Of a DNA stretch of 64,000 nt, positions 7,985 through 60,894 are shown in pieces. This DNA comes from Octopus vulgaris (Eukaryota), in NCBI GenBank assembly GCA_951406725.2, contig OX597814.1, positions 199,640,001 through 199,704,000 of the forward strand, written 5' to 3'. The position numbers and the translations under genes are program-made. The notes beneath the pieces were generated by a model. It worked only from the letters and a program-made list of their open reading frames with translations. It was not told where the DNA came from and did no database searches. How positions within the stretch are numbered: the first letter of the stretch is position 1; every line of letters begins with the position of its first letter.

Positions 7985-8078
7985 ATCTAGGCTACATATG
8001 TTTCCTAACTAGCAGATCCTCTGATGTTATAATTACTCAATGAATGGTATTCAACTAGCTGATCATCAGGCCGAAGAT
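7985..8078 (-). ncRNA. Degenerate type I hammerhead ribozyme motif
   Basis: CUGAUGA at 8069-8063; helix II UCAGCUAG/CUAGUUAG with one mismatch and a U-G closing pair; GAAA at 8004-8001; palindromic helix III ACAUAUGU; A17; short helix I GGC/GCC. Confidence 0.5.
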
Positions 8079-13816: not shown

Positions 13817-14015
13817 TGACCGCGTGTGTATCGTTGGCTATTTTCTTTCTCCGTCTTCCCTTCCTTGGACTTTTTCTTTGTTTCTGACGAAGAGCTGCGC
13901 TCGAAACGTTAAATCCTCCTCCTTCTTTCTTTCCTTTCCTGAACGTCCAATAACACTATACTTGTTCCACGTCCTCGCGTTGTTGTGTTTTATGTTTGTT
14001 CATGTTTGGATTAAC
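13817..14015 (+). mobile_element. ~200-nt Penelope-tail/retrozyme-like unit with hammerhead-like motif
   Basis: Near copy of 26410-26600. Contains CTGACGA-A-GAGC TGC GCTC-GAAA-CGTT at 13884-13910 and ends in (TAGA)n. Confidence 0.7.
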
Positions 14016-18840: not shown

Positions 18841-19154
18841 TGGAGGCGCAATGGCCCAGTGGTTAGGGCAACAGACTCGCGGTCGGAGGATCGTGGTTTC
18901 GATTCCCAGACCGGGCGTTGTGTGTGTTTATTGAGCGAAAACGCCTAAAGTTCCACGAGGCTCCGGCAGGGAGGGGGCGACTCCTGTTGTACTCTTTTGC
19001 CCCAACTTTCTCTCACTCTTTCTTCCTGTTTCTTGAGTAACGCTGCGATGGACTGGCGTCCCGTCCAGCTAGGGGGGAAACATATACCACAGAAACCGAG
19101 AAACCGGGTCCATGAGCCTGGCTAGGCTTGAAAAGGGCGCATAAATAAATAAAT
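18841..19154 (+). mobile_element. SINE family C, intact
   Basis: A box TGGCCCAGTGG, B box GTTTCGATTCC, (TAAA)n tail, and a perfect 14-bp TSD AATGGTTACTGTTA at 18827-18840 and 19155-19168. Confidence 0.93.
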
Positions 19155-20041
19155 AATGGTTACTGTTAAGCAGAGTCTATCAAACACTTAGTAACTTGCA
19201 AATTGCTTTAAAATAAGTAAACTCATGAATATTCTAAATGATCGTAGATTTCATTTTTGGAGGCAAAAAAATGTCTTGATGTCTATAGCGAGTTGCTTCG
19301 AGTATTTGGTCGTATTTTCTTATTTTCAATTTAAAGAACAATAAATTAAGTTCTGTTATATGACTACCATCAGGAGGGAGGTATTATCCAGCTGGAATTG
19401 AATACTGGAAAGTTGTTCAAACACATTGACATTAAAATATTTATTTCCAAGTAAGCTGCATTTCTGTTCATTTCTGTTACATCTGCTTTAACATACATCC
19501 TACCAGCTTAGAAAAGGAAGGTTATATGAATGATGTAGTTCTACATATATTATGCTTGTAAATAAAATTGTCTACTAATAAGGTCACGGTTGGAAAGTGT
19601 TCCATCGAATGTTTTCTCAGTTCAGGCTGCCCTGAGGTAAAGAACAACAAATGTTTTTTTACAGACTTGTCTGCTACACCACAACCTAAATATATTTCTT
19701 TAATTAACCATTTTTTCTTTTTGTTTGTTTTTAAACATTTAAGTGTTAACTATATCATGTATCTTTCCTGTCGACATAGACTACTACATTTCTTACATTA
19801 TTATAGCTTGTTAGTTTCCTCTTGTTAATTACATGTATTAAAGATTTTGATAACACCCATCTGGTAGTCTTCGGAATTCTTGTTAACTGCCTGCTTTAGC
19901 TTTTCTCATATTGGCAGGTTAATTTGCTTACCATCGTAGTTTACAAAAAGATAAAACTTATATTTACAATAGTGAAGTACTCAGATTAAAAATATATTCA
20001 CCTTTCACATAGGATTCTGCGTTCAAATTTGTATATAAATA

Positions 20042-20266: not shown

Positions 20267-20814
20267 TATAATATTAACTTACAAATAAGAGCACGCTACA
20301 TTTGAAGATGTCAACATTGAATTTATTGATACGGTTTTAATTTCACGATACATATTCAATGTTATTCGTTGAAATTAAATGTGAAATGTTTATGACAATT
20401 ATAGATGTTTCTTCGATAATGGCTGGGCTTGGATCATTGGATTACCGATTTAAATACAACAGCAAATCTGCAGCGAATGAATTTAAAAGTGAATCTACTT
20501 TTGTCAATAACTGTATTGAAATTGCATGACAATCAATCATTTCTAAACTGAAATATCTCACGCATCTGAAAGTTAAATGCCTAGGCTTCTGAATGAATGA
20601 GTGAATTTAATGACACTTCTAAAGCGTTCTGAAGTGAAATGCGTTTATAAGATATGAAAAAAAAAATTATGAAACCTTCAAATATCGAAATAAATTAAAT
20701 CTTGTGACAATCTAAAATACCACCCATATATTTTTATATAAGTTGTGTTGATTATGATAAGGAGTTAAGGCATAGAAGCACATTAATTGTATTGTTAGCA
20801 TCTGACATTAAGGT

Positions 20815-21411
20815 ACCGAGCTGGCAGAAACGTTAACGCGCCGGGCGAAATGCTTAGCGGTATTTCGTCTGCCGTTACGGTCTGAGTTCAAATTCCGCCG
20901 AGGTCGACTTTGCCTTTCACCCTTTCGGGATCGATTAAATAAGTACCAGTTACGCACTGGGGTCGATATAATCGACTTAATCCGTTTGTCTGTCCTTGTT
21001 TGTCCTTTCTGTGTTTAGCCCCTAACGGGTAGTAAAGAAATAGGTATTTCGTCTGCCGCTACGTTCTGAGTTCAAATTCCGCCGAAGTCAACTTTGCCTT
21101 TCATCCTTTCGGGGTCGATTAAATAAGTACCAGTTACGCACTGGGGTCGATATAATCGACTTAATCCGTTTGTCTGTCCTTGTTTGTCCTTTCTGTGTTT
21201 AGCCCCTAACGGGTAGTAAAGAAATAGGTATTTCGTCTGCCGCTACGTTCTGAGTTCAAATTCCGCCGAAGTCAACTTTGCCTTTCATCCTTTCGGGGTC
21301 GATTAAATAAGTACCAGTTACGCACTGGGGTCGATGTAATCGACTTAATCCCTTTGTCTGTCCTTGTTTGTCCCCTTTATGTTTAGCCCCTTGTGGGTAA
21401 TAAAGAAATAA
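20815..21411 (+). mobile_element. SINE family B tandem trimer (184-bp period)
   Basis: TATTTCGTCTGCCG recurs at 20861, 21045 and 21229 after a single tRNA-like head. Confidence 0.92.
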
Positions 21412-22330
21412 GAATCGTTATCGCGTTTGACAAAATGCTTAGCGGCATTTCTTTCTTCTCTTTATGTCATGAGTTCAAACACCTGTAGGTTAGCTTTATA
21501 GGGTCGATAAAATAAAGTACCAGCCAAGTACCGAGTTCAATGTAATAGATTTGCCTAAACCTCTCAAAGTTACTGGCCTTGTTGCCAAAATTAGAAAGAA
21601 TTATTTAAAATCTCAATCAATACAGAAATTGAGTTTGAACAAAGAGACATCCAGGAAAATGTCCTATATCACTGCGGTTTACAGTCTGAATAATCGCCAT
21701 TTATTGTTTAAAATATATAAAATTTACCAAATAACTTGGATCTTAAATTATTCATCGGTGTTATAAAAGAAAACAGATGCTTCTTTTCTTTGGGGCTGAA
21801 TATCAAGAGCTGCACACGAACATTTTGAAACTGTCTACCTCAGGGTGTTGTACTTGCTCCATCTATGCAAATGATCACTCGAAATATAATACTGAACTTG
21901 TTATCTATGCATAATTTCCCAAGGTGAAATTTGGATATCAAAACATGGCTTGATGAATACTTTAAACAACCTAAGCTATCGTTGCTACGAAAGCAAACAT
22001 TTAATTCTTAATCTTGTGAAAACACAACTCTTATTTTAATTCTCTTTTTCTTTTTTGTTTCATGTAATGAATAATGAAATCTTTAGATAGTTAAATATCT
22101 TGTGGTCATGAACAAATTTCTAACGAGTGTTTTGGAACATTTCCAGAATTCAAAACATCTCTTCGTTGCTAGAACATAATCTAAATCTCATAAAACAATT
22201 TAAGGACCAATGTGAGCACAAAATAATATCCTGCTATTTGTAACAACTTTTCAATACGGTTTCAAACCCTTAGACGCTCCGAATAACAGTATTGGCTCTA
22301 TGCAACTGAGTTGTAGTATAGCTACATATT

Positions 22331-22689: not shown

Positions 22690-24120
22690 CGAGACCTCCA
22701 TAACTGATTGTCTCAAGCTTACTGACTCACACAGTCTTATGTGTTGAGTCATTTGAGATAAGACTGTCGGTATCTCCCTTTCCATCTCTGTTCCCTACAA
22801 ATCTCCTTGCTCATACTCCTACCTCCGCTATTTCTCTTCTCAATCAAGGCACCAAATCCACTTCACCGTTCTCCTAGTTTCTCTGCCTTAATTGACTCTA
22901 CAGCATCGATTCGGATTTCGAATCGTCACGTGAGAGAATGTGACATGTGTTCCTCAAACGAAGGTATCTTCGATCGGTTTTGAACCCTGCCCTCAGCAGA
23001 ACTCAGGCTGTCGTTCGAGCCACCGTTTTCCCCATCCCTTCTTCACAGAGAGGGGTTAGAGAATGGTGGTTACTCACATTGAGACTAGATTACTCACCTT
23101 CACCATCCGTTCATCCGTACGTACATCTGCCCTACACTTTCATCTACAACTTCCAAATCCTACTCTCTGACACCCACAATCGCCTCATCTCTCTCGCACA
23201 TCTCCTCGCCGCCTTCAAGAAAGATAAAAAAAAATGCCGGCAACGTCTTAGAAGCTCCATACCACTTAGCCATGCACAACCAGCCACATTTCAATGCGTT
23301 CGCTAGAGATGCAACACTTGTCCCGATATCAACAGTGCTACGACCATCACCGATCCTTAGTCGCAGTACCACATTACATGAAACTTCCACACGTCTACTG
23401 ACATCATATACTGCATTATCAGTGAACTTAGCGATACCATCTACATTGGTGGTGGAACAGGCTGTCGCCCAGCCGATCATTTTCGCGAACACATTCCAAA
23501 TATTCTACTACGGATACCTATTTTTTTACTACCCACAAAGGGCTAAACACAGAGGGGACAAACAAGGACAGACAAACGGATTAAGTGGATTATATCGACC
23601 CCAGTGCGTAACTGGTACTTATTTAATCGACATCGAAAGGATGAAAGGCAAAGTCGACCTCGGCGGAATTTGAACTCAGAACGTAGCGGCAGACGAAATA
23701 CCTATTTCTTTACTACCCACAAAGGGCTAAACACAGAGGGGACAAACAAGGACAGACACACGGATAAAGTCGATTATATCGACCCCAGTGCGTAACTTGG
23801 TACTTATTTAATCGACCCCGAAAGGATGAAAGGCAAAGTCGACCTCGGTGGAATTTGAACTCAGAACATAACGGTAGACGAAATACCGCTAAGGATTTCG
23901 CCCGGCGTGCTGACGTTTCTGCCAGCTCGCCGCCTTATATTCTACCACGGATACCCCGCCGCCTACTACGAGACAACGGGCTACGCCATTACCTACTTAT
24001 CAGAATCCGGCATCTCTGTACACCGTGGATCCGCACAGACAAGGAAATGAAAGAAGCAACCCTTATTAAAACTTGTAATCAGTCTCCCTGTTCTGTGGAG
24101 AGTATTTTTCCATATACCTC
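22690..24120 (+). mobile_element. Decayed Penelope-like element (RT C-terminus, linker, GIY-YIG endonuclease), interrupted by a SINE B dimer
   Basis: Translation gives KLTDSHS, FS*FLCL..DSDFE..FLKRRY, NFQILLSD..AAFKKDK, C..RCNTCP, IIYCI..IYIGGGTG..DHFREH, and after the SINE GISVHRGS. These match PLE motifs (KPTDSH, IPYSQFLR, C..C, IYCI..YIGET..RFREH). Confidence 0.82.
23519..23937 (-). mobile_element. SINE family B dimer
   Basis: Two units bounded by one 18-bp TSD TATTCTAC(T/C)ACGGATACC at 23501-23518 and 23938-23955. Confidence 0.9.
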
Positions 24121-25167
24121 TTCGCTTATTATCCAGCTGTTTAATATCTTTATCTACGCGTAGTATTACAGTTTTCTCGTCCAAGCCATTAAAGAAAATG
24201 TATTGTCCTATGTAGGTAAAAATAGGCAGCCTTTGTAAAATTTATATGTATGTAGTATATCCCAAATGTAAACGAATATTTTCGTAACAATTACTGTCCA
24301 TTCCTAATTCACATGATTGTTGCTAACAACTAATTTCGTTAGCTTCTCCCTTGGTTCCATACATTTAAAATAAATAATTAAAATTAATCACAGTGCATTT
24401 TCAGAAACGACTACGCGCAATAAAATTTATTTTTTAGTATCTTATTTTAATCAGGAAGAATTTTCTAATTATTTCATTAAAGCTGTGATACGGTTAAACC
24501 CAAGTGAAAATCTACTTGTAAATGAATTCAACATAAAATCAAATGACTTCTAATACAGTAAAATATCTACATAAAGTATTGAAATGCTTTATTCAAAATA
24601 CAAACAGTACTGTCTCTTCCACGGGCGTAGTTTACTTCAAGTTTGAAATGAACGTAATTAGCAAATTGTCATGCTGTGTTAACATTGCACTAAAAAAATT
24701 AATTAGGGTACGCGCATAATTTTCATATTTTAGAATATGTTTAATAAGTTTGATTTCTGATAGTCATAGTAACTTCAAGGCAATTCACAGCATGACTTCG
24801 CATTTAAAATGGAAAACATCTTTTCCTAAGTAGTCCGTTCAACGCGTTCAAAACCTCCGCACGTTACGTAGGCTTGGAACTTGGTTAAAGAAAGAAAGTG
24901 AGAGAGAGGTGGGGAGTTTTAACAATTTGGATAGTTCCCTTCAGCTAAAAATTGGTACAAGGTAAATTGAAAACTACGCTGTCATAGTAATTACATTAAA
25001 CCATTACTTTCCATTTTGAAGACGTAAATCTGTCACAAGTTTCTGGGTTTTGTTTTGTTTTGTTTTTTCAAGTTGTTTATATGATTTTCTTTATCTTAAA
25101 CTAAAACGATAGATCGTAAAAGTCAAGTAGATCCACTAGTTCAAAGTGAAACACATACATAGAGCTT

Positions 25168-25489
25168 TCTCTCTCACACTCGCTCACTCTCTCTGTTTAT
25201 CTTTCTCTCTCCCTCTCTCTTTCTCCCTCTCTCTTTCTCTCTCTCTTTCTCTCTCTCTCTTCTCTCTCTCTCTCTTTCTCTCTCCCTCTTTCTCTCTCTC
25301 TCTCCCTCTTTCTCTCTCTCTCCCTCTTTCTCTCTCTCTCCCTCTTTCTCTCTCTCTCCCTCTTTCTCTCTCTCCCTCTCTCTCTCTCTCTCCCTCTTTC
25401 TCTCTCTCTCTCCCTCTTTCTCTCTCTCCCTCTTTCTCTCTCTCGCTCTTTCTCTCTCTCGCTCTTTCTCTCTCCCGCTCTTTCTCTCT

Positions 25490-25550
<61 letters not shown>

Positions 25551-25660
25551 CTCTCTTTCTCCCTCTTTCTCTCTCTCTCCCTCCCCTCTCTCTCTCTTTC
25601 TCTCTCTCTCCCCTTCTTACTCTCTCTCACACACAGACACATCATACACTCACGCACACT
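25168..25660. repeat. (CT)n-rich polypyrimidine/polypurine tract
   Basis: Directly visible; source of the LSLS/ERER ORFs. Confidence 0.97.
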
Positions 25661-26224
25661 TACACACATTTGCGTCTAAGCTAAGCTACCATTTCCAGTC
25701 AACGTGACAGTACAAGATATCGACCATCGCCAAGACTATTCTTGGTGTACTTCCGTTCGGTCTATTCACTTCATATATTTACTTCTCCTTTTCACTTGTA
25801 CAACGAAGTATTATCCTTTAATTTTGCTACAAGTTCGCTTTGGCTTGTCTCACTTAGTAAACCGAGATTCAGATATTTCCTGTTCAGTATTACATAAAGA
25901 CATCAATGAAATTGCAATTAGTTAATGAATATGTAAAATAAAACCAAAAATTAGTTTGAGTGATTAATCTTCCTATACCTTAGCCGTTTACAAAAACATT
26001 AGGGATAAGCATTAAATTTCATTATATGAAACCTTCGTATGTTTAATTCTGTCAAATCTCAGATCTCCAGTTGTCTGAAGCCTCTCCAGCATGTAATTTT
26101 CTGAATTTCTCTTCTAATTTGAAGCATCCAAAAAGTCACCGTATTCATTTTTCGTCTGTTCAAAGTCTGTTCTCCAGACAAAGAAAGTGTTGGTGAGAAA
26201 TTTTGAGATTGAGTTATATAATAA

Positions 26225-44619: not shown

Positions 44620-44983
44620 TGGCTGTGTGGTAAGTAGCTTGCCTACCAACCACATGGTTCCGGGTTCAGTCCCACTGCGTGGCATCTTGGTCAAGTGTCT
44701 TCTGCTATAGCCTCGGGCCGGCCAATGCCTTGTGAGTGGATTTGGTTGACGGAAACTGAAAGAAGCCTGTCGTATATATGTATATGTATGTGTGTGTATA
44801 TGTTTGTGTGTCTGTGTTTGTCTCTCTAGCATTGCTTGACAACCGATGCTGGTGTGTTTACGTCCCCGTCACTTAGCGGTTCGGCAAAAGAGACAGATAG
44901 AATAAGTCCTGGGGTCGAGTTGCTCGACTAAAGGTGGTGCTCCAGCATGGCTGCAGTCAAATGACTGAAACAAGTAAAAGAGT
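44620..44983 (+). mobile_element. SINE family A
   Basis: Family head (slightly truncated) and 3' module. Confidence 0.9.
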
Positions 44984-45155
44984 ATATATGTATATTTAAA
45001 GGACAAAACCACTAGGTGGTCGGCTGTATGCTAGAAGTAGATCACCTACGATCAAACTACAAAGAAAAGAATGTTCTCTAGAGGAAATTCAGCGGACACC
45101 AGAACCATAGGCGGGTAAGACCGATGAAAATTGTATAAAAAAAAAACAGAATTAC

Positions 45156-45231
45156 TCACAGACTGGCGGTTTCGTCTATTAACAAATGAATCACTTATAT
45201 AATCCAATTGTCCGTAGACTCGTCAGTGCGA
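45156..45231 (-). ncRNA. Type I hammerhead ribozyme, complete catalytic core
   Basis: Helix I UCGCA/UGUGA; CUGACGA at 45226-45220; helix II GUCUA/UAGAC extended by further stems; GAAA at 45173-45170; short helix III AC/GU; GUC cleavage triplet at 45163-45161. Confidence 0.8.
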
Positions 45232-45282
45232 TCGTTCCACAGGTAATGTGATCACGGTGATATATATATATATATATATATA

Positions 45283-45585
45283 TCACCGTGACCGACCAGG
45301 TTATCAGATGTTGCTACACATCACTGGTCACAATGCGCTTCGAATTGTTTTAGCCTTCAAATGACGCCACCCCGCTGGCTAAGCGAGCAGGCCAACAGAA
45401 GAAAGTGTGAGAGAAAGTCGTGACGAAAGAGTACAGCAGGTATCGCCACCACCCCTTGCCAGAGCCTTGTGGAGCTTTAGGTGTTTTCGCTCAATAAACA
45501 CTCACAATGCCCTGTCTGAGAATCAAAACCGCGATCTTATGACCGCGAGTCTGCTGACCTAACCACTGGGCCATTGCACCTCCAC
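45283..45585 (-). mobile_element. SINE family C variant
   Basis: Head matches 18841-18960; different 3' half ending in (TA)n. Confidence 0.85.
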
Positions 45586-45990: not shown

Positions 45991-46789
45991 TCTGTCAAAC
46001 ATATTGCTAAAGTTGTTTTGTATTTTGTTGTGGGGTTTTTTTATGAAATTATTTGGAACGCAAGCAGTTTCTTCTGAAGACATAAGGAGCCAGAAAAAAA
46101 TCTGTCAGTGAAGTTTCTCTGTGGGGCCACAATATAATGAGCAACTAAGATGAGACACTAGAATGCACCAATTGATTTGCTATGCATGTGGTAATTTGAG
46201 TAGAAAAATGTATGCTTAAAGCATAAACTATTTATTGTTCTTTCTCAAATAATAATAAAAAAATATATCAGCTCTTGAAAAGAAAACACATGTTTGAGAA
46301 TCATTTAAAAAACAAATTTTTTCTTGTGGTAAATATTCAGTTTAACCATCATTAAGTGTTTGTTCAATTATGACATAGATCAATAGATCAGTAATTATCT
46401 ATAAAAAAAAAATTTTAGATCCACCCATAATTATTTTACTATGTTTCTTCTGCCGCAACCTTTTCAAAGTTATAATGTTACTATATAAAGTTGCCATAGC
46501 AATCGCCAAAGAAAATATTTCTTCGTGTGTTTCTTAGGAACTAGAAGCATATCTTAAATGTCTTTAGACAAATCAGGCAGTTCTTTGTCCTGTTATTGTT
46601 TTAAATATTCCTCGTTTATCCAGCTGAATTTCATTTTGTAACGAAATACTAATTGCCGTATCATCTTTTACTTTAATTTTTTCTTTTGAGAAAATCTCAT
46701 CAATGTGTTTACTTTCTATTCATCCAAAGTAGAGAATATCATAAAACATATCACAAATAATAAACATGATAACAGAAAAATATTGTTTT

Positions 46790-47150
46790 ACTCTTCTTCT
46801 TCTTCTTTCATTTCTTCTTTCATTTCTTTTTCTTTCACTTCTTCTTCTTTCTTTCACTTCTTCTTCTTCTTCTTTCACTTCTTCTTTCACTTCTTCTTCT
46901 TCTTTCACTTCTTCTTTCGCTTCTTTAATTTCTTCTTCTTTCACTTCTTCTTCTTTCACTTCTTCTTCTTTCACTTCTTCTTTCATTGATTCTTCTGTCA
47001 CTTCTTCTTCTTCTTCTTTCACTTCTTCTTCTTCTTTCACTTCTTCTTCTTCTTTCACTTCTTCTTCTTCTTTCACTTCTTCTTCTTCTTTTACTTCTTC
47101 TTCTTTCACTCCTTCTTCTTCTTCATCTTCTTTCACTTCTTCTGCTACTT
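46790..47150. repeat. (TTC)n-based minisatellite, unit TTCAC(TTC)n of 15-18 nt
   Basis: Directly visible; reads EEEVK/EEEEVK on the minus strand. Confidence 0.92.
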
Positions 47151-48371
47151 GTTTTTGCTTTCCCTTATCCTTTTCTTTCCATCCTTCTCTTAAAACCATT
47201 CTAATCTTTCTCCCAGCGCTTCTCCTTGACTTCTTGTTTCAGATATTTCCACATGTTCTCTCATCATCACTCTCCTTCATTTTCCCTACCACTAAGTTCT
47301 TCTACGTTTTCGCTCCATTCTCTTTCCCTCTTTCATCATCCATTCCTGGAACACAACGATAATGGATTACTACCTTTTACGTTAATTCCCAATGTGGTTT
47401 CTATTAACGCTAAATAATAATAATAAATTCCAATCCACTTATATTAGTGTGTGATTGTCGTCATTAGACATTTCACATTCACTCCCCGTTATCCTTTCTC
47501 AAATATACTTCCGTTGCTTTTGTTTTGTTGCTTCCCAGAACAGTTCTCCTCTTTATATTTATTATCTGAAAAAAAAAAATATGATCTGAAAATTAATCTG
47601 GTAATACAATTGATGACAACATCTAGAACAACCTGGATTGGTGCCAAACTGTTTTATATGACAAGGCCAGCTATTTGCACCCCGCCAAAAAATTAACCAA
47701 CTTTGATTTTCAAAATCAAAATGTTTTAGAGAAAAAAATAAAATAGAAATTTGAAATCACTGAATTTATTTTAAAAAGCAAAAATAATACCAGTCTTTGA
47801 TCAATTGTTTTCAAATACAAAATACAAAAAATATTAGCACACAAATCATTTTGACAGTGTGTTTAGTTGAATGCATTTTTCTGTCAGGACAATATAAAAT
47901 TAAAACCTTTTTCCTTCTCACATACCTCTTCAGGTTAATTGATGAAACCAATCCATTATCACAGCAATAAGCAGAGAAGTAAACAAAAATCGTTGTTAAA
48001 AATGTAACTTCTTTGGCAGAGGAATTCTTGTGAATTGAGTTGTTAATATTTGTCATTTGTTTCAAGTCTAGATGCATCAAAATCTCACTTACCATGCTTT
48101 GAATTTGTAGAATTTATCACCAATTGAATCAAATAAATTGCTATTGATTGGGCATGCTCAATTGATGTAAATGCCTAGGAACTATTTTCTTTGTACAACA
48201 TTGTTGAACATATATGTTATTTTATAAATTTGTACTATGATAAACTTAGCTCACCATTAGCCAGTGGTACCAATTGTGTGAGAGGATCACTAGAGAAATG
48301 GAAACATTGGATACATTACCCAGGAATTTGTTGTACGAAGAAACATGATCCTTGTGGTGGTACAGACATTA

Positions 48372-51850: not shown

Positions 51851-52167
51851 TATTATTTTTATTTATGCGCCCTTTTCAAGCCTAGCCAGGCTCATGGGCC
51901 CGGTTTACCGGTTTCTATGGTGTATGGGTTCCCCCAGGTGGATGGACACCAGTCCATCACAGCATTACTCAAGAAACAGGAAGAAAGAGTGACAGAAAGT
52001 TGGGGCGAACGAGTACAACAGGGGTCACCCCCCACCCTGCCGGAGCCTCATGGAGCTTTTAGCTGTTTTCGCTCAATAAACACACACAAAGCCCGATCTG
52101 AGAATCGAAACCACGATCCTCCGACCACAAGTCCGCTGCCCTAACCACTGGGCTATTGCGCCTTCAC
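51851..52167 (-). mobile_element. SINE family C
   Basis: Colinear with the reverse complement of 18841-19154. Confidence 0.88.
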
Positions 52168-57260: not shown

Positions 57261-57507
57261 TCTTTTACTTGTTTCACATTTGACTGCGGCCATGCTGGAG
57301 CACCGCCTTTAATCGAGCAACTCAACCCCGGAACTTATTCTTTTGTAAGCCCAGTACTTATTCTATCGGTCTCTTTTGCCGAACCGCTAAGTGACGGGGA
57401 TGTAAACACACCAGCATTGGTTGTCAAGCAATGCTAGGGGGACAAACACAGGCACACAAATACATACACACACATACATAATATATATATATATATATAT
57501 ATATATA

Positions 57508-58072
57508 GGAAAAAAGCAACAAGAATGGATTAAAATCTCGGTACGATCGTTTCGTACGAGGACATCTTTAATAAGCTACAAAAAATGCAGTGAATACAGA
57601 TGGCTCGTACTCGTCAGCCGAAAAAATATCAGAGAATTCCCAAACATCAAAAGGGGTAGATACAAAAGAGGTTGTAAGATTAACTGCATTGAAGAAAGTT
57701 CGATTCATGGAGATCCGATGAAAGGTTTTAAACCTATAGAATTTATGCATGTCTACATATAGCTCATATTGAATATTTGATCAAGTTGTATGAAGAAATT
57801 TTCGGATACAGTCATGCAAAATTTCTGAAAATCCATAAGAGGCAAAGTGACTGCCACATCATGTAGAGGAAAGTCACTGCATTTTTTGTAGCTTATTAAA
57901 GATGTCCTCGTACGAAACGATCGTACCGAGATTTTAATCCATTCTTGTTGCTTTTTCCTATTTATAATCACCCCACTTGTCGTATGGTTAACACCATATA
58001 GATATCCGGTGCATCCTAGTTAAGGACCATATTCATGTGAATTCTTTAGAATTCACTAGAATCTCAATTACT

Positions 58073-58233: not shown

Positions 58234-58572
58234 TATCATCATCATCATTTAACGTCCATTTTCCATGCTCTGGCATAGGTTGGATGGCTTGACTGAGGCC
58301 TAGTGAGACAGCAGCTTTACCAGGCTTCAATCTGATCTGGCAATGTTTCTACAGCTGGATGCTCCTCCTAACACCAACCACTCGGAGAGTGTAGTGGATG
58401 CTTTTTACATGCCACCAGCACAGGAGCCAGTCAGGTGGGCCTAGCATCGATAACGTTTGAATAGTGCTTTTTACGTGCCACAGGCACAGCAGCCAGTCAG
58501 GGAATACTGGCATCGACCATGTTCGGATGGTGCTTTTTACATGCCACTGGCAGAGGAGCCAGTCAGGTGGAC

Positions 58573-58575
<3 letters not shown>
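58234..58575 (-). mobile_element. Family D repeat
   Basis: (CAT)n end and shared core. Confidence 0.8.
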
Positions 58576-58607
<32 letters not shown>

Positions 58608-60282: not shown

Positions 60283-60530
60283 TTTATTCTTTCACTTGTT
60301 TCAGTCATTTGACTGCAACCATGCTGGAGCACTGCCTTTAGTCGAACAAATCGACCCCAGGACTTATTCTTTGTAAGCCTAGTACTTATCCTATTGGTCT
60401 CTTTTGCCAAACCGCTAAGTTACGGGAACATAAACACACCAACATTGGTTGTCAAGCGATGTTGGGGGGCAAACACAGACACACAAACATATACATAATA
60501 CATACATACATATATATATATATACATATA
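60283..60530 (-). mobile_element. SINE family A 3' module, CpG-decayed
   Basis: GACTGCAACCATGCTGGAGCACTGCC versus GACTGCGGCCATGCTGGAGCACCGCC in left-hand copies. Confidence 0.85.
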
Positions 60531-60894
60531 TATATGTGTGCCTCACTGCAGCTATGCTGTGACTGGAACAAGTAAAAGAGTAATCCTTTCTACTACAGGC
60601 ACAAGACCTGGATTATGTGGGGAGGGGGACAGTTGATCACATCAACCCCAGTAGTCAACTGTTACCTGATTTATCGACCCCAAAACGATGGAAGGTAAAG
60701 TTGACCTTGAGGGAATTTGAACTCAGTAAATAGCAACGGACGAAGTACTGCCAAGCATTTCATCCAGCAGGCTAATGATTCAGCCAGCTCACCACCTTTA
60801 ATAATAATAAGAAGAAGAATCGTTTCTACTATAGGCACAAGGCCTGAAATTTGGGGAAGAGGAATAGTCAATTACAGCAACCCCAGTGTTTGAT

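What the first reader, a model, noticed from the sequence alone, without database searches (positions are those of the whole stretch)
57536..57623. Complete hammerhead ribozyme hidden in what looks like a MITE
Seen: on the minus strand every conserved HHR core nucleotide is present (CUGACGA, GAAA, GUA). Helix I is 6 bp. Helix II is a perfect 7 bp, extended by CAUCU/AGAUG and a CUGCA/UGUAG hairpin. Helix III is the self-complementary ACGAUCGU. Established: minimal type I HHRs with a palindromic helix III are typical of Penelope-like elements and animal retrozymes, and can cleave as dimers. Inference: this is a self-cleaving RNA of a small non-autonomous retroelement, which a repeat annotator would likely mislabel as a TA-flanked MITE.
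Basis: partly seen in the sequence, partly recalled or inferred. Interest (0 to 1): 0.8.

Follow-up and report, generated by a model that had tools for sequence, protein, structure and literature searches.

The report
Hammerhead ribozyme in truncated retroelement insertion
The minus strand at 57536-57623 carries a genuine-looking type I hammerhead ribozyme motif. It most likely sits in a short, dead, Penelope-type retroelement insertion whose two inverted ends make it look like a MITE. This kind of element is already known to be very common in animal genomes.

Summary
Every hammerhead core nucleotide and all three helices are at the stated coordinates, with the cut between 57542 and 57541.

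- **Rfam:** Hammerhead_1 (RF00163) matches 57536-57623(-) end to end, but only at 21.4 bits (cut-off 34). The hit appears only when about 100 nt are searched, because helix II carries a 47-nt insert.
- **Chance:** a descriptor of my own finds two hits in the window, this one and a second at 45155-45232(-). Dinucleotide shuffles give 0.01 hits per window.
- **The MITE look:** it comes from an 83-nt perfect inverted repeat, 57511-57593 / 57874-57956 (85/86 nt with one indel). Both arms hold the 3' half of the ribozyme. Only the DNA next to arm 1 completes it.
- **Best reading:** a 366-nt 5'-truncated copy plus an 85-nt inverted twin, both with 3' ends outward, next to a (TA)n tract. This is the published signature of Penelope-like element insertions, which carry hammerheads near their 3' ends.

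I found no other copy in the window or in any searchable collection. Conservation, covariation and cleavage are therefore untested. This is a new member of a known kind, of modest interest.

The parts
57536..57623 (-). Complete type I hammerhead ribozyme motif (HHR1). Predicted cut between 57542 (A17) and 57541 (C1.1).
   Evidence: Sequence; Rfam RF00163 full-length match, 21.4 bits, E = 0.0026 on 105 nt; own descriptor against shuffles.
57611..57617 (-). Core box CUGACGA (C3-A9).
57554..57610 (-). Helix II: 7-bp stem GUACGAG/CUCGUAC, then a 43-nt extension (CAUCU/AGAUG and the CUGCA-UUUUU-UGUAG hairpin). There are 57 nt between A9 and G12.
   Evidence: Fold. Rfam shows it as a 47-nt insert in loop 2.
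57543..57553 (-). GAAA (G12-A15.1) and the self-complementary helix III ACGAUCGU. In a monomer this is 2 bp plus a GAUC tetraloop. Between two copies it is an 8-bp duplex.
   Evidence: The monomer helix III adds +0.3 kcal/mol. The 8-bp duplex is -10 kcal/mol.
57508..57593 (-). Inverted-repeat arm 1. It is the 3' end of the long copy and holds the 3' half of HHR1 plus a 34-nt tail after the cut site.
   Evidence: the repeat finder I1, 83 nt, 100%; arm alignment.
57874..57958 (+). Inverted-repeat arm 2. It is a short 85-nt inverted copy of the same 3' end. It holds only the 3' half of the ribozyme, and no CUGANGA lies upstream of it.
   Evidence: No descriptor hit on the + strand here.
57594..57873 (-). 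Unique internal 280 nt. Its last 30 nt (57623-57594) supply helix I 5' strand, the CUGACGA box and helix II 5' strand. There is no convincing ORF.
57479..57507 (.). (TA)n tract at the tail of an abundant SINE (57402-57507), directly abutting arm 1. It is the likely insertion target.
45155..45232 (-). Second, unrelated type I hammerhead motif (HHR2). It also has a long helix II (46 nt between A9 and G12).
   Evidence: Descriptor; Rfam RF00163, 19.2 bits, E = 0.013 on 101 nt.

Best explanation
The 451-bp unit 57508-57958 is a dead-on-arrival insertion of a Penelope-like retroelement, or of a non-autonomous retrozyme mobilised by one. It has two parts.

- **Long copy:** a 366-nt 5'-truncated copy on the minus strand (57873 to 57508). 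It carries the element's type I hammerhead 34 nt before its 3' end.
- **Short copy:** an 85-nt, even more truncated copy of the same 3' end, in inverted orientation (57874 to 57958).

How it most likely arose and works:

1. **Insertion (inferred from published biochemistry):** the PLE protein nicks both DNA strands at a (TA)n-rich target. It primes reverse transcription from both nicks on the 3' region of the element's RNA. Both outer ends of the insertion are therefore the element's 3' end.
2. **Role of the ribozyme:** in the master element's multimeric or tandem transcripts, two hammerheads pair through the palindromic ACGAUCGU to form an 8-bp helix III. Each then cuts after GUA.
3. **This copy:** it is a single copy and is probably inactive.

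Shown here: the motif, the inverted twin architecture and the (TA)n flank. Inferred: the PLE origin, the twin-priming mechanism and any catalysis.
For: **The motif is real**
- The core and three helices are all present.
- Rfam Hammerhead_1 aligns full length.
- Descriptor: 2 hits observed against 0.01 expected.
- Starting from the window's real stems of 7 bp or more, only 0.07 are expected to be flanked by both core boxes, before helices I and III are even required.
- HHR2 has the same architecture but different helix sequences. Four of 6 helix I pairs and 3 of 5 helix II pairs differ on both sides and still pair.

**The inverted repeat is a copy, not a functional terminal repeat**
- The arms are 83/83 identical, with one T-run indel.
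- The arm boundary falls inside the loop of helix II, so the arm is an arbitrary truncation of a longer functional unit.
- Only the sequence contiguous with arm 1 completes the ribozyme.

**Match to published PLE anatomy**
- Insertions are highly 5'-truncated, often with an adjacent inverted 5'-truncated copy that forms inverted repeats.
- The HHR lies near the 3' end, and (TA)n is a preferred target (PMC8557442).
- Dual HHRs occur 100-700 bp apart on opposite strands, and most motifs are single and derive from truncated PLEs (PMC4209133).
- A purified PLE protein cleaves and extends both DNA strands, with the same RT start sites on each (PMC11167929).

**Ribozyme style and dimer requirement**
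- Helix III of 2 bp plus a palindromic tetraloop is the invertebrate type (PMC7229834).
- Dimer requirement is consistent.
Against: - No second copy of this family was found in the window, in metagenome, genome or viral collections, or through ORF look-ups.
- Variable 5' truncation, a link to an RT/GIY-YIG ORF, and covariation within the family are therefore all untested.
- No RT or GIY-YIG domain appears in the 100 longest open frames of the window.
- The Rfam score is below the gathering threshold. Scaled to the whole window, the E-value would be about 1.6.
- Long perfect terminal inverted repeats with TA on both sides also fit a DNA-transposon MITE.
- The (TA)n flank belongs to a SINE tail that is common in this genome, so it is weak evidence of target choice.
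- The canonical loop 1 - loop 2 contacts are not recognisable.
Confidence: 0.66

Rival explanations
1. It is a true MITE or foldback DNA transposon with roughly 86-bp terminal inverted repeats and a TA target-site duplication. It happens to contain, or once captured, a hammerhead-bearing fragment. It moves as DNA by cut-and-paste, and the ribozyme plays no part in its spread.
For: - 83-nt perfect inverted arms, with GG/CC ends.
- TA immediately outside both ends.
- Small size and no ORF.
Against: - The arm boundary cuts through helix II of a complete ribozyme, and the ribozyme is completed on one side only. This is what an arbitrary truncation of a retro-copy gives, not a functional terminal repeat.
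- Hammerheads are a hallmark of PLEs and retrozymes, whose insertions are documented to form exactly such inverted ends.
- There is no other copy in 64 kb.
- No other near-perfect short-range inverted pair in the window would suggest an active long-TIR MITE population.
Confidence: 0.17
2. It is a solo retrozyme or PLE fragment whose inverted arm is secondary. The arm would come from a local palindromic duplication, for example from hairpin or replication errors at the (TA)n tract, or from a foldback artefact of the assembly. It would not come from the insertion mechanism.
For: - The arms are 100% identical apart from one homopolymer indel, which is typical of long-read error.
- The region is full of (TA)n palindromic tracts.
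Against: - Both arms stop at the same nucleotide (…GCUUUUU(U)CC), and unique DNA follows on the right side.
- The twin structure is the expected PLE outcome and needs no extra event.
Confidence: 0.1
3. It is a chance match: an ordinary hairpin that happens to be flanked by CUGANGA and GAAA, with no ribozyme ancestry.
For: - The Rfam score of 21.4 bits is below the 34-bit cut-off. There was no hit at gathering or in the 361-nt search.
- The relaxed descriptor has a background of 1.46 hits per shuffled window.
Against: - The strict descriptor expects 0.01 hits per window, and none of 300 shuffles reached h1>=5/h2>=5.
- Agreement with the Rfam consensus goes beyond the invariant core: C7, G10.1-C11.1, U10.2-A11.2 and C15.2-G16.2.
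- Helix III is palindromic, which is not a feature a chance match would favour.
- There is a second independent hit in the same window.
Confidence: 0.04

Closest known systems
Hammerhead ribozymes in the pseudo-LTRs of Penelope-like elements (Cervera & de la Pena 2014; Craig et al. 2021)
   Same: - Type I topology, with a stable 7-bp helix II.
- G10.1-C11.1 is present.
- Helix III is small and palindromic, so a dimer is needed.
- The motif lies close to the element's 3' end.
- The insertion is 5'-truncated, has an adjacent inverted truncated copy, and abuts a (TA)n tract.
   Different: - No RT/GIY-YIG ORF or pLTR homology could be shown.
- There is no bulged nucleotide between A9 and G10.1, which the min-HHR families usually have.
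- Helix II carries an unusually long extension, with 57 nt between the two core boxes.
Animal non-LTR retrozymes (Cervera & de la Pena 2020; Li et al. 2026 preprint)
   Same: - Canonical-like type I HHR with a 2-bp helix III plus a palindromic tetraloop, the 'invertebrate' type.
- AT-rich, non-coding unit of a few hundred nt.
- Monomeric dispersed copies are reported, and retrozymes are proposed to be pLTR derivatives of PLEs.
   Different: - It is not in a tandem array, and there is no direct repeat inside the unit.
- circRNA expression is unknown.
Rfam RF00163 Hammerhead_1 (Schistosoma / newt satellite type)
   Same: The full-length alignment shares CUGACGAGU…ACGAAACG..CGU with the consensus, including the loop-less palindromic helix III.
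   Different: - It scores 21.4 bits against a gathering score of 34.
- It has a 47-nt insert where the model has a 4-nt loop.
- H17 is A rather than C.
- The loop 1 / loop 2 tertiary-contact nucleotides are not recognisable.
Stowaway / Tc1-mariner-type MITEs
   Same: Short, non-coding, with terminal inverted repeats and TA on each side.
   Different: - The arms are much longer than is usual for this type (my own knowledge).
- Their inner boundary cuts a ribozyme in half.
- No family of uniform copies was seen.

Membership tests
Hammerhead ribozyme, type I | Conserved core: C3 U4 G5 A6 N7 G8 A9, G12 A13 A14, the A15.1-U16.1 pair, and H17 (not G) before the cut. | tested here: met
   CUGACGA at 57617-57611, GAAA at 57553-57550, U16.1 at 57543 and A17 at 57542.
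Hammerhead ribozyme, type I | Three helices around the core, with helix I open-ended. | tested here: met
   Helix I is 6 bp. Helix II is 7 bp plus an extension. Helix III is 2 bp plus a tetraloop, or an 8-bp intermolecular duplex.
Hammerhead ribozyme, type I | Rfam curated score cut-off (34 bits for RF00163). This is a curators' threshold, not a biological feature. | tested here: not met
   The score is 21.4 bits. There was no hit at gathering. The shortfall coincides with the 47-nt insert in loop 2.
Hammerhead ribozyme, type I | Conservation of the core and compensatory changes in the helices among homologous copies. | tested here: inconclusive
   No homologous copy was obtainable. Only a cross-family comparison with HHR2 was possible. 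It shows 7 pairs changed on both sides that still pair.
Hammerhead ribozyme, type I | Mg2+-dependent site-specific self-cleavage. | not testable with these tools
   This needs in vitro transcription of monomer and dimer. Folding predicts an inactive monomer in which core ACGA pairs with UCGU (P = 0.84-0.97).
Penelope-like element insertion | A single ORF with a telomerase-like RT and a GIY-YIG endonuclease. | tested here: not met
   No RVT or GIY-YIG Pfam hit in the 100 longest open frames of the window, and none in the unit. This cannot be an autonomous copy. A 366-nt 3' fragment would not be expected to hold the ORF.
Penelope-like element insertion | Hammerhead motif in the terminal non-coding repeat, near the 3' end. 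| tested here: met
   The cut site lies 34 nt from the outer end of the unit. Feature as described in PMC8557442.
Penelope-like element insertion | 5'-truncated copy with an adjacent inverted 5'-truncated copy, 3' ends outward. | tested here: met
   A 366-nt copy plus an 85-nt inverted copy that end at the same nucleotide. The ribozyme is complete on one side only.
Penelope-like element insertion | Insertion bias for microsatellites such as (TA)n, with variable target duplication. | tested here: inconclusive
   (TA)n abuts arm 1 and TATTTATAA abuts arm 2. However, (TA)n tails of SINEs are everywhere in this window.
Penelope-like element insertion | Sequence homology to the pLTR of a full-length PLE in the same genome. 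| not testable with these tools
   The source genome and Repbase are not available.
Animal non-LTR retrozyme | Head-to-tail tandem repeats (about 170-400 bp), each with a type I HHR. | tested here: not met
   It is a single unit with no internal direct repeat. Monomeric derivatives are nevertheless reported.
MITE (TA-targeting DNA transposon derivative) | Terminal inverted repeats, a flanking TA duplication, small size and no ORF. | tested here: met
   The TA duplication cannot be told from the TA-rich context.
MITE (TA-targeting DNA transposon derivative) | A family of many near-uniform copies that all have both termini. | not testable with these tools
   There is no second copy in the 64-kb window.

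The most novel reading that the evidence does not exclude
The unit is a functional design rather than a dead insertion. It would be a foldback element in which the roughly 86-bp inverted arm acts as an antisense clamp that switches the hammerhead off in read-through transcripts. Alternatively, it would be a DNA-mobilised MITE that carries a ribozyme. The long helix-II hammerhead would then define a class that standard Rfam screens miss.
Probability: 0.06. Interest if true: 0.6.

Novelty: new member of a known kind. Interest (0 to 1): 0.3.

Why it matters
Mainly for annotation. A hammerhead with a 57-nt helix II is invisible to a standard Rfam scan: there was no hit at gathering, and none until the search was cut to about 100 nt. 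The inverted twin ends of a PLE-type insertion will also be called a TA-flanked MITE by repeat finders. If the family is young, as the identical arms suggest, the source genome may hold an active hammerhead-bearing PLE or retrozyme lineage. That would make it useful material for the still open question of what these ribozymes do for PLEs. The phenomenon itself is well documented in animal genomes: thousands of such motifs, mostly in truncated PLEs.

Tried and rejected
- **Rfam at gathering, whole window:** nothing.
- **Rfam at E<=10 on 361 nt:** only microsatellite-driven miRNA noise. The hammerhead hit appears only with 105 nt.
- **Other copies in the window:** BLAST of the unit against the window found only its own inverted arm. 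The first BLAST was swamped by the flanking SINE and (TA)n.
- **External copies:** exact-pattern scans of metagenome contigs, prokaryotic genome contigs and viral contigs found nothing.
- **ORF trick, using spurious ORFs across the element to find other copies or the source organism:**
  - no encoding contig;
  - no homologue;
  - none of 10 window ORFs is in the protein collection.
  - The organism was therefore not identified with tools.
- **Coding content:** ORFs in the unit are short and unconvincing. Pfam on the 100 longest open frames gave no RT or GIY-YIG, only three chance-level hits.
- **Covariance model:** the MAFFT alignment of HHR1 with HHR2 misaligned the 3' halves, so I built no model and counted pairs by hand in a script.
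- **Dimer cofold:** the output was uninformative. I replaced it with the duplex energy of helix III.
- **Weak candidates:** the relaxed descriptor gave a min-HHR at 13884-13910(+) and a degenerate motif at 8069-7993(-). Neither is supported by Rfam, and the relaxed descriptor has a background of 1.46 hits per shuffle. I do not count them as evidence.

Full report
**1. The observation**

Read on the minus strand, 57623 to 57536 is UUUCGG-CUGACGA-GUACGAG-[43 nt]-CUCGUAC-GAAA-CGAUCG-UA-CCGAGA.

- All invariant hammerhead positions are present: C3-A9 at 57617-57611, G12-A14 at 57553-57551, A15.1 at 57550, U16.1 at 57543 and A17 at 57542.
- Helix I is 6 bp with one U-G pair.
- Helix II is a perfect 7 bp beginning with G10.1-C11.1. 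It continues through CAUCU/AGAUG and a CUGCA-UUUUU-UGUAG hairpin.
- ACGAUCGU is self-complementary.
- The MFE fold reproduces helices I and II and both extensions (-27.2 kcal/mol against -17.2 for shuffles, z = -3.7).

**2. Is it more than chance?**

- Rfam found nothing at gathering thresholds in the whole window. It also found nothing at E<=10 in a 361-nt stretch.
- With only 105 nt given, so that the filters are lax, RF00163 Hammerhead_1 aligns to exactly 57536-57623(-). The match covers model positions 1-45 of 45, at 21.4 bits and E = 0.0026.
- That alignment agrees with the consensus beyond the invariant core: C7, U10.2-A11.2, C15.2-G16.2 and a loop-less palindromic helix III.
- The score is below the 34-bit cut-off. 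The alignment shows a 47-nt insert where the model has 4 nt.
- I wrote an RNAmotif-style type I descriptor: CUGANGA, helix II of at least 4 bp, GAAA, a palindromic or hairpin helix III, UH, and helix I of at least 4 bp. It gives two hits in the window, this one and 45231-45156(-).
- Three hundred dinucleotide-preserving shuffles give a mean of 0.01 hits. None has both helices of 5 bp or more.
- A null built from the window's real stems of 7 bp or more expects 0.07 of them to be flanked by both core boxes, before helices I and III are required.
- The second hit also matches RF00163 full length (19.2 bits, E = 0.013 on 101 nt).
- HHR2 differs from HHR1 on both sides of 4 of the 6 helix I pairs and 3 of the 5 helix II pairs compared, and those changed pairs still pair.

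Chance is therefore a poor explanation.

**3. What surrounds it**

- The 'MITE' look is a perfect 83-nt inverted repeat, 57511-57593 and 57874-57956, with 280 nt between the arms.
- With one T-run indel it extends to …GCUUUUU(U)CC, so the arms are 57508-57593 and 57874-57958.
- Outside the left arm is (TA)n (57479-57507), the tail of a SINE that is abundant in the window. Outside the right arm is TATTTATAATCA.
- The arm boundary at 57593/57594 lies inside the loop of helix II.
- Both arms therefore contain the 3' half of the ribozyme: the helix II 3' strand, GAAA, helix III, the cut site, the helix I 3' strand and a 34-nt tail.
- Only the unique DNA contiguous with arm 1 supplies the 5' half: the helix I 5' strand, CUGACGA, the helix II 5' strand and CAUCU.
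- Upstream of arm 2 on the plus strand there is no CUGANGA.
- The arms are thus arbitrary truncations of a longer functional unit. The unit reads as a 366-nt copy on the minus strand (57873 to 57508) plus an 85-nt inverted copy (57874 to 57958), head to head with both 3' ends outward.
- There is no second copy in the window.
- No other near-perfect short-range inverted pair occurs in the window.
- There is no convincing ORF in the unit.
- No RT or GIY-YIG domain appears in the 100 longest open frames of the window.

**4. How it most likely works**

This anatomy is the published signature of Penelope-like element (PLE) insertions.

- Craig et al. 2021 (PMC8557442) describe four matching features:
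  - a high degree of 5' truncation;
  - frequently an inverted 5'-truncated copy immediately adjacent, forming inverted repeats around the unit;
  - hammerhead motifs near the 3' ends in the pseudo-LTRs;
  - (TA)n as a preferred target.
- Cervera & de la Pena 2014 (PMC4209133) make these points:
  - They found thousands of such motifs per animal genome.
  - Most were single motifs attributed to truncated PLEs.
  - Some were 'dual' motifs 100-700 bp apart on opposite strands.
  - The motifs have a long helix II, a conserved G10.1-C11.1 and palindromic 15.2-16.2/loop 3.
  - They work as dimers, with low activity in vitro.
- The 2020 NAR study (PMC7229834) calls a 2-bp helix III capped by a tetraloop the invertebrate type.
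- A purified PLE protein cleaves and extends both DNA strands and starts reverse transcription at the same internal sites for both (PMC11167929). This gives a mechanism for two outward-facing 3' ends.
- A 2026 preprint argues that animal non-LTR retrozymes are pLTR derivatives of PLEs and often occur as monomers.

My reading is that a hammerhead-bearing PLE or retrozyme RNA was reverse-transcribed from both nicks at a TA-rich site. This left a truncated copy and its inverted twin.

In the master element, two ribozymes pair through ACGAUCGU and cut after GUA. The 8-bp duplex is -10 kcal/mol, whereas the monomeric helix III is worth +0.3 kcal/mol.

This genomic copy is probably inert, for two reasons.
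- In the monomer, core A6-A9 is predicted to be paired with UCGU (P = 0.84-0.97).
- A transcript through the whole unit folds into a roughly 90-bp foldback of -198.7 kcal/mol that buries the 3' half.

The identity of the arms (0 substitutions in 83 nt) suggests a recent insertion.

**5. What is not shown**

- No homologous copy could be retrieved. DNA scans of the metagenome, prokaryotic genome and viral collections found nothing.
- Protein look-ups with ORFs from the element and the window also found nothing.
- As a result, several things are untested: family-level conservation and covariation, variable 5' truncation, linkage to an RT/GIY-YIG ORF, and catalysis.
- The source organism was not identified by any tool. 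The window is an AT-rich (about 36% GC), SINE- and microsatellite-laden eukaryotic sequence. From memory, the SINE resembles cephalopod repeats, but that is only a lead.
- A DNA-transposon MITE with long TIRs and a TA duplication remains possible (about 0.17). So does a secondary palindromic duplication or an assembly foldback (about 0.1).

**6. Comparison and novelty**

- It works like, and most probably is, a PLE/retrozyme hammerhead.
- It fails the definition of an autonomous PLE, because there is no ORF.
- It fails the definition of a tandem retrozyme, because it is a single unit.
- It meets the structural features of a truncated PLE-type insertion.
- Its distinctive trait is the long helix II: 57 nt between the core boxes here and 46 nt in HHR2. 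This hides both motifs from a standard Rfam scan.
- Craig et al. mention cores separated by 35-50 nt in some Naiad PLEs as 'half cores', so even this has a precedent.

**Verdict:** It is a new member of a known kind, of modest interest.

Noticed in passing
window 45155-45232 (-): A second complete type I hammerhead motif: AUCGCA-CUGACGA-GUCUA-[36 nt]-UAGAC-GAAA-CCGCCAG-UC-UGUGAG. Rfam RF00163 scores it 19.2 bits, E = 0.013 on 101 nt. It is unrelated in sequence to HHR1 (z = 0.5). It lies just downstream of a (TA)n tract flanked by the short inverted repeat CACGGTGA…TCACCGTG.
   Followed up: partly
window 13880-13914 (+): A candidate PLE-style minimal hammerhead: GUUU-CUGACGA-A-GAGC-UGC-GCUC-GAAA-CG-UU-AAAU. 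It has the bulged nucleotide after A9, G10.1-C11.1 and the palindromic CG that the literature describes. It has no Rfam hit, and it came from a relaxed descriptor with 1.46 background hits per shuffle.
   Followed up: partly
window 7993-8075 (-): A degenerate hammerhead-like motif: CUGAUGA … GAAA-CAUAUG-UA. It has a palindromic helix III, an AGAUUUUA tail like HHR1, and ends about 36 nt after the putative cut at a (TCTA)n/(TG)n microsatellite. Its similarity to HHR1 is weak (z = 3.0). Helix II is poor and there is no Rfam hit. It may be an old relative of the HHR1 family.
   Followed up: partly
window 57402-57507 and at least 12 other places (e.g. 159-267, 44773-44861, 60431-60535): An abundant SINE whose 3' part ends in (CA)n/(TA)n microsatellite. 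It dominates the window and supplies most of its TA tracts.
   Followed up: no
window 18841-19155 (+), 51860-52167 (-), 45394-45585 (-): A tRNA-derived SINE family with a (TAAA)n tail. The copy at 18.8 kb is flanked by a 13-bp direct repeat ATGGTTACTGTTA, which looks like a target-site duplication. The 45.5-kb copy has a different 3' half ending in (TA)n.
   Followed up: partly
window 58399-58596 (+): Three tandem copies of a 66-nt unit (71-76% identity) running into a (TA)n tract (family D3).
   Followed up: no
window 20809-21416 and 23513-23937: Inverted pair of about 92% identity over roughly 375-424 nt, with 185-nt sub-repeats, about 2.1-2.3 kb apart. This is an unexamined larger repeat structure.
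   Followed up: no
window 25146-25679 and 46720-47362: Long low-complexity purine/pyrimidine-rich tracts that give spurious ORFs of 160-200 aa on both strands.
   Followed up: no
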